Below the pieces are notes generated by a model. The model saw only the letters and a list, made by a program, of their open reading frames with translations, had not been told where the DNA came from and ran no database searches. This document shows positions 11,001 through 12,284 of a stretch of 64,000 bases of DNA, piece by piece (position 1 is the stretch's first letter; every line of letters starts with the position of its first letter). Position numbers and translations under genes: made by a program. Origin of the DNA: Tubulanus polymorphus. Taxonomy: Eukaryota > Animalia > Nemertea. The stretch is taken from assembly GCF_964204645.1 (NCBI RefSeq), contig NC_134036.1:1-64000 (forward strand), in the 5' to 3' direction.

Positions 11001-12284
11001 GACCAGCACCGAAACTTTATAAACAATAGGTTTGGCCTTAAATACCGGTAGTTAATGACAACCGAGGAAAACTGTTATATAGAAAAGTAAAATAAAATTG
11101 AGGCCGCACCAATTTGATTCGCCGGTGGAATTCAGAGCGTTTTACTTATCAGAACCGAAACCGGGGTAGGGAATAGTTATGGATTACAGCCACCAGGTGT
11201 CTCTAGCGCACACAGGGACGTTTAATTAGATTATTATCATAGTTTATTAATTATAATTAGTATAATTAATTAATTGAGGAGATTGCGGCGAGTGAAAATT
11301 TCTTTCAATTTTGTCGAAACTAAAAATCAAAATTGCATTTTTTTTTACTCAATTGACTGAATAACTTATAATCAATCAATAATTGTTGTTGATTGCAACA
11401 ATTGCAGCTATGACAACGACGTCAGAAGAGCCCCAGATAAATCACAATGGTGGTACCTGCAGCTGATGAGAACGGGTTGAATTGAAACTTACACAAACTG
11501 CATGGGGCCTCTTCCACTTTCTGTTGTATGTGGGAACGGTCTAAAAAAACGAAAAGAGAATCAGAAACAACAGTTCTCCTCGTTAGTCATCTCCTTCTCT
11601 CCTCGTCATTCTCATCATTCTCTCATTGAGATTATTATCTAATAGATATAGATATATATATATAGGGGGCGTTGCTGCAGCTGTTGATGAAAGTCGGGGG
11701 GTTCAGTTTAGTTTGTTTAGATGGTTAAATCTCACACACTGTTTATTAGAATAGACAGAGGGGATAGAATAGTCGGTGACCGGAGCCACCCACTCGCAGT
11801 GACTGGAGCCACCCACTCGCAGCGACCACAGTCACGGAGATGGATGCTACTCGTTAGAGATCGGAGCCACCCACTCACTGAGACTTGATCCGCTTATAAC
11901 TCTCTGAGACCGGAGCAACTCACAGTGCTCTGAACTTAAGGGGAGGGGGGTGTTTAATAGACTAGAGACTACAGTAGTTTTAATATAGATAGATGGAGAC
12001 CCAACAGAATGGAGGGGGTACACCGACCTAACCATGCTTACGTGTCGCCCCCTACTGGTGGAATATATACAGTTAAAGGTTTACCTGGGTATAGTAATAC
12101 ATTTAGTGTTAGAACTTTGAGTAGTTATAGCTTTCTCCAGTTCATCCAATCCTCCAGATTTACGCAGTTTTTTCACTAAACTTTTCACAGCTTTTTCCGT
12201 CCATTTCTCATCTTTATCGAGGTCACCTTTTTTCCAACCCAATAACCGTTTAACAATCGGCGGAGTGAACGGTAACATCGACAT
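8078..12284 (-). CDS. SMAD3: Smad2/3 (TGF-beta/Activin/Nodal R-Smad), 7 constitutive coding exons, 409 aa
   Basis: Exons 12284-12085, 10736-10414, 9748-9698, 9295-9047, 8701-8564, 8460-8316, 8201-8078, all GT-AG and frame-consistent. MH1 ([13 protein letters not shown]...[28 protein letters not shown]), MH2 ([14 protein letters not shown]...), Smad2/3-type L3 loop [13 protein letters not shown] and C-terminal CSSVS. This is the invertebrate pro-orthologue of SMAD2/SMAD3. Confidence 0.98.
8730..9030. repeat. 30-31 bp intronic minisatellite, about 10 copies (Smad intron)
   Basis: Unit ATCTATATGACGATGTACACCTCCCCCTGG. Confidence 0.95.
9878..10385. repeat. 27-bp intronic minisatellite, about 15 copies plus degenerate copies (Smad intron)
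   Basis: Unit CCCTAGTTCAAGTTCCCCTCTCCCTGA. Confidence 0.95.
11493..11540 (-). CDS. Candidate 48-nt in-frame cassette exon of Smad2/3 (adds [16 protein letters not shown] in MH1)
   Basis: Acceptor TTCTGATTCTCTTTTCGTTTTTTTAG, donor GT|GTAAGT, phase 2/2 matching the flanking exons, no stop. Confidence 0.6.

What the first reader, a model, noticed from the sequence alone, without database searches (positions are those of the whole stretch)
11493..11540. Hidden in-frame cassette exon in an invertebrate Smad2/3 at the position of vertebrate SMAD2 exon 3
Seen: the intron between ...KCITIPR and [13 protein letters not shown] contains a 48-nt segment with a strong acceptor (CTGAT branch-like word, long T/C tract, AG) and a consensus GTAAGT donor. 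It is phase 2/2 like its neighbours, has no stop, and inserts [16 protein letters not shown]. Known: vertebrate SMAD2 differs from SMAD3 by a 30-aa alternatively spliced exon 3 inserted at this same point, just before the DNA-binding beta-hairpin, which alters DNA binding. The peptide here does not resemble that exon. Inference: one Smad2/3 gene may produce Smad3-like (skipped) and Smad2-like (included) isoforms by splicing, either convergently or as an ancestral switch. The ORF track does not show this exon.
Basis: partly seen in the sequence, partly recalled or inferred. Interest (0 to 1): 0.88.

Follow-up and report, generated by a model that had tools for sequence, protein, structure and literature searches.

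The report
Real 48-base Smad2/3 insert exon
The 48-base segment is a genuine, expressed coding exon of the single Smad2/3 gene of the ribbon worm Tubulanus polymorphus. It adds 16 residues just before the DNA-binding hairpin, at the site of vertebrate SMAD2 exon 3. RefSeq already lists isoforms with and without it, and database isoforms of several other invertebrate phyla carry unrelated inserts at the same site.

Summary
Window 11540..11493 (minus strand) is a 48-nt, phase-2/2, stop-free segment. It has the strongest acceptor tract in the gene and a perfect GTAAGT donor. Spliced transcript contigs from two independent studies (2014 and 2024) include it exactly, with joints 12085>11540 and 11493>10736.

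The organism is Tubulanus polymorphus (Nemertea). RefSeq isoform X1 (XP_074661367.1, 425 aa) carries [17 protein letters not shown]. Isoform X2 (XP_074661368.1, 409 aa) lacks it. The exon is therefore real but not hidden.

Inclusion is the assembled, apparently major form. Skipping is supported only by the RefSeq X2 model, and I saw no skip junction in contigs.

The site is the phase-2 intron where SMAD2 exon 3 sits. Unrelated inserts occur at this same site in annotated isoform pairs of scallops, octopods, echinoderms, ticks, a damselfly, oysters, Lingula, Lineus, lampreys and hagfish. For a sea star, a scallop and an octopus I confirmed discrete cassette exons in genomic DNA. The two papers I read treat the insert as a vertebrate SMAD2 feature.

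Any effect on DNA binding is inferred, not shown. The finding is a new member of a known kind and of moderate to high interest.

The parts
12085..12284 (-). Smad2/3 exon 1, coding part (ATG at 12284; MSML...KCITIP + AG of a split codon). The exon runs on as 5' UTR to at least 12439. Donor is gtaaac.
   Evidence: ORF and sequence; Pfam MH1 positions 2-41; contig pieces 12085-12439 (X4) and 12085-12333 (X5); exact match to RefSeq P0233/P0351.
11541..11590 (-). 3' splice region of the insert exon: ACTAAC (11587-11582), CTGAT (11564-11560), a tract with 17/18 pyrimidines, and AG (11542-11541).
   Evidence: Sequence; strongest acceptor tract in the gene, 17 pyrimidines against 9-14 for the others; unique on the minus strand of the window.
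11493..11540 (-). 48-nt insert exon, phase 2/2. It encodes (R)[15 protein letters not shown](V), 16 added residues.
   Evidence: Joints 12085>11540 and 11493>10736 in spliced contigs of X4 and X5; present in RefSeq isoform X1 P0351 and absent from X2 P0233; single copy in the genome.
11487..11492 (-). Consensus donor GTAAGT of the insert exon.
   Evidence: Sequence; skipped part ends CT..AC on the plus strand.
10414..10736 (-). Exon 2: [16 protein letters not shown]-binding hairpin, the rest of MH1 and the start of the linker.
   Evidence: Pfam MH1 positions 42-103, E 7.9e-28; contig pieces 10414-10734; aligned to the SMAD3 MH1 structures 1ozj/1mhd.
9698..9748 (-). 51-nt linker exon ([17 protein letters not shown]).
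   Evidence: Loose end of the contigs at 10414 continues into this sequence; splice sites; contained in P0233.
8078..9295 (-). MH2 exons 9295-9047, 8701-8564, 8460-8316 and 8201-8081, then the stop at 8080-8078. The C-terminus is SSVS.
   Evidence: Pfam MH2 on each exon; splice sites; all translations contained in P0233. The CDS is 1275 nt (425 aa) with the insert exon and 1227 nt (409 aa) without it.

Best explanation
Window 11540..11493 (minus strand) is a genuine coding exon of the single-copy Smad2/3 gene of the nemertean Tubulanus polymorphus. A strong branch site, a long pyrimidine tract and a perfect GTAAGT donor define it, and it is spliced into the predominant mRNA. It places 16 residues ([16 protein letters not shown]) inside the MH1 domain, directly before Ser-Leu-Asp-Gly-Arg-Leu-Gln, the first strand of the beta2-beta3 DNA-binding hairpin.

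Shown: the exon is real, included, frame-preserving, and sits in the phase-2 intron that holds vertebrate SMAD2 exon 3.

On record but not verified in RNA here: a skipped isoform, RefSeq X2. If it is real, the exon is a cassette that lets one gene make a Smad2-like (insert) and a Smad3-like (no insert) protein.

Inferred: the insert is a flexible surface loop that leaves the MH1 core intact. It would modulate how freely the hairpin reaches DNA or partner proteins, by analogy with the SMAD2 E3 insert, which conditionally auto-inhibits DNA binding.
For: - Spliced contigs from two studies include the exon with exact GT..AG joints.
- RefSeq X1 (425 aa) and X2 (409 aa) differ only by this peptide, and all window exon translations match them exactly.
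- The splice signals are the best in the intron and the acceptor tract is the best in the gene.
- The gene is an AR-Smad: MH1 and MH2 domains, SSVS terminus, one copy beside one Smad1/5-like and one Smad4-like gene.
- The insert maps between SMAD3 Arg-68 and Ser-69 in the MH1-DNA structures 1ozj/1mhd.
- AlphaFold2 models keep the same MH1 elements with and without the insert. Residues 69-94 of the long form score pLDDT under 50. Mean pLDDT is 64.4 with the insert and 74.5 without.
- The SMAD2 E3 insert is flexible, occludes the hairpin in closed conformers and is needed for full Nodal responses (PMC6824466).
- Isoform pairs with inserts at the same site occur in many phyla, which suggests the site is used functionally.
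Against: - No contig in four runs shows the skip joint 12085>10736. Contigs drop minor variants, so this is weak evidence, but skipping then rests on an automatic RefSeq model that may lean on cross-species protein alignments.
- The exon is not conserved in the only other nemertean genome available. Lineus longissimus has no such cassette in the orthologous intron.
- The closest other transcript-derived protein (P0286, 76% identical over residues 1-200) has no insert.
- The peptide shows no similarity to SMAD2 exon 3.
- There is no biochemical evidence of any kind.
- The AlphaFold2 models have only moderate confidence.
Confidence: 0.6

Rival explanations
1. The exon is constitutive. It is always, or nearly always, included, so Tubulanus has only the insert-bearing Smad2/3. 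RefSeq isoform X2 would then be an annotation product, for example built from alignments of insert-less Smad3 proteins of other species.
For: Both RNA assemblies give a single contig through exon 1, the insert exon and exon 2, with no skip contig. The exon has the strongest acceptor tract in the gene and a consensus donor.
Against: RefSeq lists a skipped isoform. At the same site other lineages have both forms in transcript assemblies. In ticks, 424-aa sequences in the insert-form cluster were seen on 69 and 13 contigs, and 417-aa forms on 104 and 31 contigs. Contig assembly removes minor paths, so absence of a skip contig is weak evidence.
Confidence: 0.3
2. The exon arose by lineage-specific, near-neutral exonization. 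It is spliced in and translated, but the 16 residues form an inert surface loop with no regulatory role. The many inserts at this site in other animals would then reflect a structurally tolerant loop next to a long intron, not selection.
For: The exon is not conserved in Lineus. There is no sequence similarity between phyla. The insert is modelled without confident structure. Insert lengths at this site range from 4 to 30 residues.
Against: Within echinoderms the cassette peptide is conserved across sea stars, a brittle star and sea urchins. It is also conserved within scallops (0 of 1000 shuffles reach the observed scores) and, according to PMC6824466, across vertebrates. That argues for constraint at least in those lineages. 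The insert lies 5 and 7 residues before the Arg and Gln of SLDGRLQ. That these two residues contact DNA is my own knowledge of the Shi et al. 1998 structure, not a tool result.
Confidence: 0.25
3. The segment is a chance pseudo-exon that the spliceosome does not use.
For: Introns hold many AG..GT pairs. There are 99 frame-keeping open candidates in this intron.
Against: Exact inclusion in spliced contigs from two independent studies, presence in RefSeq X1, and about 0.007 pairs of this strength expected by chance.
Confidence: 0.01

Closest known systems
Vertebrate SMAD2 exon 3 (E3 insert; SMAD2 versus SMAD2-beta / SMAD2-delta-exon3)
   Same: An in-frame exon in the phase-2 intron after ...KC(I/V)TIP + AG and directly before [13 protein letters not shown], the beta2-beta3 DNA-binding hairpin. 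The insert-bearing form is the major mRNA, as PMC6824466 reports for SMAD2. The short form equals a Smad3-like MH1.
   Different: 16 residues rather than 30. No sequence similarity (score 14, 56% of shuffles do as well). No helices predicted in the insert, whereas E3 has two short helices. It sits in a single-copy Smad2/3 gene rather than in one of two paralogues. Skipping has not been verified in RNA and function is untested.
Cassette exons at the same intron in other invertebrate Smad2/3 genes: Pecten maximus 48 nt, Octopus sinensis 39 nt, Patiria miniata 63 nt
   Same: Discrete AG...GT(A/G)AGT exons inside the same phase-2 intron, giving RefSeq X1/X2 isoform pairs. The scallop exon is also 48 nt long.
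   Different: The peptides are unrelated: S.G.RSPLQ.VARAMEK, GGLAGVEHFQNYC, SEHVVSGTNVLAHPTNTKAQS. The only hint of likeness is Tubulanus RGPMQFV against scallop RSPLQLV, p about 0.01 before correction for 11 tests, and the motifs sit at different positions within the exon.
Lineus longissimus (Nemertea) Smad2/3 isoform X1
   Same: Same phylum and the same insertion point in the protein (RATTDYR before SLDGRLQ).
   Different: The 6 extra residues come from an alternative acceptor 18 nt upstream of exon 2, not from a cassette exon. The orthologous intron holds no recognisable copy of the Tubulanus exon.
Short inserts at the same site in ticks (SGGVAVG, SGCGG), oysters (SSDF), Lingula (SESC), hagfish (SATLCDG) and lampreys (SAVPCGG; also a 13-residue insert, DKSVSAGVPWSRR)
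   Same: Isoform pairs that differ only at this junction. The tick forms are seen in many transcript contigs.
   Different: Most are only 4-7 residues long. I did not examine their genomic basis (micro-exon or alternative splice site).

Membership tests
Receptor-regulated Smad, Smad2/3 (activin/TGF-beta) type | N-terminal MH1 domain with the beta-hairpin [13 protein letters not shown] | tested here: met
   Pfam PF03165 on exon 1 (E 4.3e-07) and exon 2 (E 7.9e-28). The hairpin is identical to SMAD3 in 1ozj.
Receptor-regulated Smad, Smad2/3 (activin/TGF-beta) type | C-terminal MH2 domain ending in an SSXS phosphorylation motif | tested here: met
   Pfam PF03166 on four exons. The C-terminus is ...PCSSVS followed by a stop.
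Receptor-regulated Smad, Smad2/3 (activin/TGF-beta) type | Closer to Smad2/3 than to Smad1/5/8 or Smad4 | tested here: met
   Best solved matches are SMAD3 MH1 (4.9e-66), against SMAD5/9 (about 1e-52) and SMAD4 (about 3e-30). RefSeq names it 'homolog 3-like'. The genome also holds separate Smad1/5-like and Smad4-like loci.
SMAD2-exon-3-type alternative MH1 insert | Exon lies in the intron directly before the hairpin codons, in phase 2, with a length divisible by three and no stop | tested here: met
   The same split AG|N codon is seen in Lineus, Patiria, Pecten and Octopus. For vertebrates it is inferred from the IPS.../IPR isoform difference.
SMAD2-exon-3-type alternative MH1 insert | Exon is included in mature mRNA | tested here: met
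   Joints in spliced contigs of X4 and X5.
SMAD2-exon-3-type alternative MH1 insert | Exon is skipped in part of the mRNA (true cassette) | tested here: inconclusive
   RefSeq X2 lacks it. No skip joint appears in the contigs of four runs. Raw reads could not be examined.
SMAD2-exon-3-type alternative MH1 insert | Sequence homology to the vertebrate E3 peptide (TCSEIWGLSTPNTIDQWDTTGLYSFSEQT) | tested here: not met
   Local alignment score 14; 563 of 1000 shuffles reach it.
SMAD2-exon-3-type alternative MH1 insert | Insert lowers or gates DNA binding by the MH1 hairpin | not testable with these tools
   There is only a positional argument and AlphaFold2 models of moderate confidence.

The most novel reading that the evidence does not exclude
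An alternatively included mini-exon or splice-site extension at the phase-2 intron just upstream of the MH1 DNA-binding hairpin is a general, selected feature of bilaterian Smad2/3 genes. It would be either an ancestral switch whose peptide has diverged beyond recognition, or a solution reached repeatedly. Single-gene lineages such as nemerteans, molluscs, echinoderms and ticks would then make both a Smad2-like and a Smad3-like protein, and vertebrate SMAD2 exon 3 would be one lineage's version rather than a vertebrate invention.
Probability: 0.4. Interest if true: 0.8.

Novelty: new member of a known kind. Interest (0 to 1): 0.6.

Why it matters
The division of labour between SMAD2 (insert, gated DNA binding) and SMAD3 (no insert) is a central theme of TGF-beta/Nodal signalling. 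Both papers I read on the point (PMC3500652, PMC6824466) describe the insert as specific to vertebrate SMAD2. Five full-text searches found no description of an invertebrate counterpart.

A verified insert exon at the same site in a nemertean, together with unrelated inserts at that site in at least six other invertebrate lineages, raises a possibility. Isoform-level control of Smad2/3 DNA binding may be much older or more often reinvented than assumed.

The question is directly testable by comparing the two isoforms in an animal with a single Smad2/3 gene.

For genome annotation the lesson is ordinary: a 16-codon exon is invisible to ORF scans but was recovered by RNA-guided annotation.

Tried and rejected
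- **Insect guess.** From the run dates I first guessed an insect (1KITE/DToL). The exact match to Tubulanus polymorphus RefSeq proteins rejected this.
- **Exon 2 searches alone.** Searching with exon 2 showed only the vertebrate SMAD2 insert and a tick insert. Cluster representatives and the length filter hid the other isoforms.
- **No joined model.** Exons were searched by reference as separate rows of alignment A2. Full-length work used the RefSeq proteins P0351 and P0233 that the tool returned.
- **Repeat or transposon origin.** The 301-nt region around the exon is single copy in the 268-Mb genome.
- **Lineus conservation.** The best peptide match in the orthologous intron (PFQHTQE, score 29) is reached by 68 of 500 shuffles and has no splice sites, so I rejected it as chance.
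- **Cross-phylum homology of insert peptides.** None is significant after correction.
- **AlphaFold2 comparison.** The two MH1 isoform models have only moderate confidence, so they give weak support for a flexible insert.
- **Literature.** Searches found nothing on invertebrate Smad2/3 insert isoforms. The library lacks most subscription journals, so this is not proof of absence.
- **Runs X2 and X3.** They turned out to be DNA-like or proximity-ligation-like and gave no splice information.

Full report
**1. The observation**

On the minus strand the window holds a Smad gene. Exon 1 starts at the ATG at 12284 and ends ...AAA TGT ATT ACT ATA CCC AG at 12085, followed by gtaaac. Exon 2 starts at 10736 with G TCA CTA GAC GGT CGA TTG CAG (SLDGRLQ).

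Inside the 1348-nt intron, positions 11540..11493 are 48 nt long. They are preceded by ttctcttttcgtttttttag and followed by gtaagt. In phase 2 they read (AG)A CCG TTC ... TTT GT(G), which is [17 protein letters not shown] without a stop.

**2. Is it more than chance?**

- Of 99 frame-preserving, stop-free AG..GT candidates in this intron, this one ranks first by a wide margin, with 17/18 pyrimidines and a 6/6 donor match.
- On the minus strand of the whole window it is the only YAG acceptor with at least 17/18 pyrimidines.
- Both strands together (128 kb) hold only four pairs of a strong acceptor (at least 16/18) with a GTRAGT donor 12-300 nt downstream. This is the only one that keeps frame and stays open.
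- That gives an expectation of about 0.007 per intron of this length.
- Within the gene, its acceptor tract is the strongest (17 pyrimidines against 9-14) and its donor is consensus. The donor of exon 1 (gtaaac) departs further from the consensus than the GTAAGT/GTAAGA donors.

**3. RNA evidence**

One search for sequencing runs gave five runs of the same organism from two studies.

- X4 (2014, study P2) has one 1797-nt contig.
- X5 (2024, study P1) has one 2195-nt contig at depth 288.8.
- Each contig lies in three pieces: 12085-12439 (X4) or 12085-12333 (X5), 11491-11540, and 10414-10734.
- The joints skip 544 and 756 bases, whose ends are CT..AC on the plus strand, which is GT..AG on the gene strand.
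- The second joint can equally be cut two bases further, giving 11493>10736.
- The loose end at 10414 continues into the next exon at 9748.

The 48-nt segment is therefore spliced into mature mRNA in two independent data sets, with no sequence difference between them.

No contig shows the skip joint 12085>10736. Contigs drop minor variants, so this shows that inclusion dominates, not that skipping is absent. Runs X2 and X3 cover intron pieces and give no splice information.

**4. The gene and the organism**

- The exons carry MH1 (exon 1 holds profile positions 2-41 and exon 2 holds 42-103, so the intron splits the domain exactly there) and MH2.
- The protein ends in SSVS.
- I derived the exon model from splice sites and homology. 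Coordinates are 12284-12085, 11540-11493, 10736-10414, 9748-9698, 9295-9047, 8701-8564, 8460-8316 and 8201-8081. This gives 1275 nt (425 codons) with the insert exon and 409 codons without it.
I searched them by reference as separate rows of an alignment.
- The best hit contains every exon translation exactly except the insert. It is RefSeq XP_074661368.1, 'mothers against decapentaplegic homolog 3-like isoform X2 [Tubulanus polymorphus]', 409 aa.
- Its 90% cluster has one more member, XP_074661367.1, isoform X1, 425 aa. It reads ...[30 protein letters not shown]....
- The window therefore comes from the palaeonemertean Tubulanus polymorphus, and the exon is already annotated.
- The genome (268 Mb, 77 contigs) has one Smad2/3 locus, one Smad1/5-like locus and one Smad4-like locus. 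The exon region is single copy.

**5. Where the insert sits**

Against the SMAD3 MH1-DNA structures 1ozj and 1mhd, the 16 residues fall as one gap between ...CITIPR and [17 protein letters not shown]. That is directly N-terminal to the beta2-beta3 hairpin that reads the DNA major groove.

Vertebrate SMAD2 has its 30-residue E3 insert at the same junction (VTIPS-TCSE...EQT-RSLDG). The change of the junction residue between isoforms (S or R) fits the same split AG|N codon.

AlphaFold2 models built on a 39-sequence alignment keep the same helices and strands in both isoforms. The short form has mean pLDDT 74.5 and pTM 0.69. The long form has 64.4 and 0.52, with residues 69-94 (the insert plus the first hairpin strand) below 50. 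This is weak evidence, but it fits a flexible surface insert.

**6. What is known about the vertebrate counterpart**

Aragon et al. 2019 (PMC6824466) report the following.

- The E3 insert is conserved in vertebrates and flexible, with two short helices.
- It leaves the MH1 fold intact and samples open and closed conformers.
- The closed conformers occlude the hairpin, which they call conditional auto-inhibition.
- The insert form is the major mRNA in most tissues and is needed for full induction of mesendoderm genes.

Sorrentino et al. [quoted passage not shown] They add that its origin 'merits further analysis'.

**7. Relatives**

A search with the RefSeq long form (residues 1-200) and two cluster look-ups showed that isoform pairs differing only at this junction are common.

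| Lineage | Insert | Residues |
|---|---|---|
| Lineus longissimus X1 | ATTDYR | 6 |
| Scallops (Pecten, Ylistrum, Argopecten) | S.G.RSPLQ.VARAMEK | 16 |
| Mytilus coruscus | SQWRIFHQVKSR | 12 |
| Oysters | SSDF | 4 |
| Lingula | SESC | 4 |
| Octopods | GGLAGVEHFQNYC | 13 |
| Sea stars, a brittle star, sea urchins | SEHV.SGT..L.HP...KA.. | 19-21 |
| Damselfly Hetaerina | not written out here | 24-25 |
| Metastriate ticks | SGGVAVG | 7 |
| Ixodes | SGCGG | 5 |
| Lampreys | two forms | 7 or 13 |
| Hagfish | SATLCDG | 7 |

- One 430-aa octopod sequence with the insert was seen on 83 transcript contigs.
- The urchin forms include GenBank entries QDQ70998 and AXN69711, named smad2-3 and SMAD2/3, both 446 aa.
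- In ticks, 424-aa sequences in the insert-form cluster were seen on 69 and 13 transcript contigs, and 417-aa forms on 104 and 31.

I fetched four loci to check the genomic basis.

- In Patiria miniata the insert is a 63-nt discrete exon, in Pecten maximus 48 nt, and in Octopus sinensis 39 nt.
- All three have AG and GT(A/G)AGT borders and lie inside the same phase-2 intron after ...CC(N) AG|GT.
- In Lineus the six residues come from an alternative acceptor 18 nt upstream of exon 2.
- The Lineus intron has no credible copy of the Tubulanus exon. The best score was 29, 68 of 500 shuffles reach it, and there are no splice sites.
- The closest other transcript-derived protein, P0286 (76% identity over residues 1-200, species unknown), has no insert.

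**8. Are the inserts homologous?**

Within echinoderms and within scallops the peptides are clearly conserved (0 of 1000 shuffles reach the observed scores). Between phyla they are not.

Tubulanus against SMAD2 E3 gives p about 0.56, against echinoderms 0.14-0.84, and against octopus 1.0. The only low value is Tubulanus RGPMQFV against scallop RSPLQLV, at 0.009 before correction for 11 comparisons. The two motifs lie at different places in exons of equal length.

I therefore cannot tell an ancient, diverged cassette from repeated independent gains.

**9. Mechanism, with steps marked**

- Shown: the exon is real, defined by strong signals, included in the predominant mRNA and frame-preserving. 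It lies immediately before the DNA-binding hairpin, at the SMAD2-exon-3 site.
- On record but not verified by me in RNA: a skipped isoform (RefSeq X2).
- Inferred: the insert is a flexible loop that gates access of the hairpin to DNA or changes partner contacts, as the E3 insert does. One gene would thereby supply Smad2-like and Smad3-like activities.
- Rivals: a constitutive exon (0.3), a near-neutral lineage-specific exonization (0.25), and a chance pseudo-exon (refuted).

**10. Novelty and verdict**

The exon itself is already in RefSeq, so it is not a new annotation. As biology it is a new member of a known kind, an MH1 insert exon of the SMAD2-exon-3 type. It occurs in an invertebrate with a single Smad2/3 gene.

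The wider pattern is visible in databases. In five full-text searches I did not find it described, and it runs against the published view that the insert is a vertebrate SMAD2 peculiarity.

Interest is moderate to high (0.6). It is limited by the lack of evidence for skipping, for conservation within nemerteans and for function.

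Noticed in passing
L007:6708-6770 (Patiria miniata), L008:9697-9744 (Pecten maximus), L009:50395-50433 (Octopus sinensis): Discrete cassette exons of 63, 48 and 39 nt lie in the same phase-2 Smad2/3 intron as the Tubulanus exon. 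Each has AG and GT(A/G)AGT borders and an unrelated peptide. RefSeq lists X1/X2 isoform pairs for each.
   Followed up: partly
L006:5880-5905 (Lineus longissimus): The other nemertean with a genome gets a 6-residue insert (ATTDYR) at the same protein site. It comes from an alternative acceptor 18 nt upstream of exon 2, not from a cassette exon.
   Followed up: yes
window 12130-12159 and L010:1501-1530 (G000:C12:388261-388290): Contigs of runs X2 and X3 (depth about 16-30) join Smad2/3 exon 1 at 12130 to a point 376 kb away on the same contig, inside a long open frame that I did not identify. There is no shared word and no splice signal at the joint. It looks like a chimera of a ligation-type library, but it remains unexplained.
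   Followed up: partly
window 15306-20113 (+): A gene ending in a RING-H2 finger lies head-to-head with Smad2/3, a few kb from its 5' end. The best solved match of the finger is the Arkadia/RNF111 RING (2kiz, E 1.2e-13). Arkadia is a known regulator of Smad signalling (own knowledge), so the neighbourhood may be an old linkage.
   Followed up: partly
window 9698-9748 (-): A 51-nt linker exon reads [17 protein letters not shown] where vertebrate SMAD3 has ETPPPGYLSEDGET. The PPxY motif is therefore absent in this alignment, as another first-stage note said.
   Followed up: partly
window 9880-10382 and 8732-9031: There are long tandem arrays inside Smad2/3 introns: a 27-bp unit in 18.7 copies and a 30-bp unit in 10.1 copies. 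A 23-bp repeat lies at 11776-11827 in the intron that holds the insert exon.
   Followed up: no
protein P0227 (Logan contig, species unknown): This Smad2/3-like fragment has SLDGRLQVS replaced by ...RPANGENGVA before HRKGLPHV. Some lineages have therefore rewritten the first hairpin strand itself rather than adding an insert.
   Followed up: no
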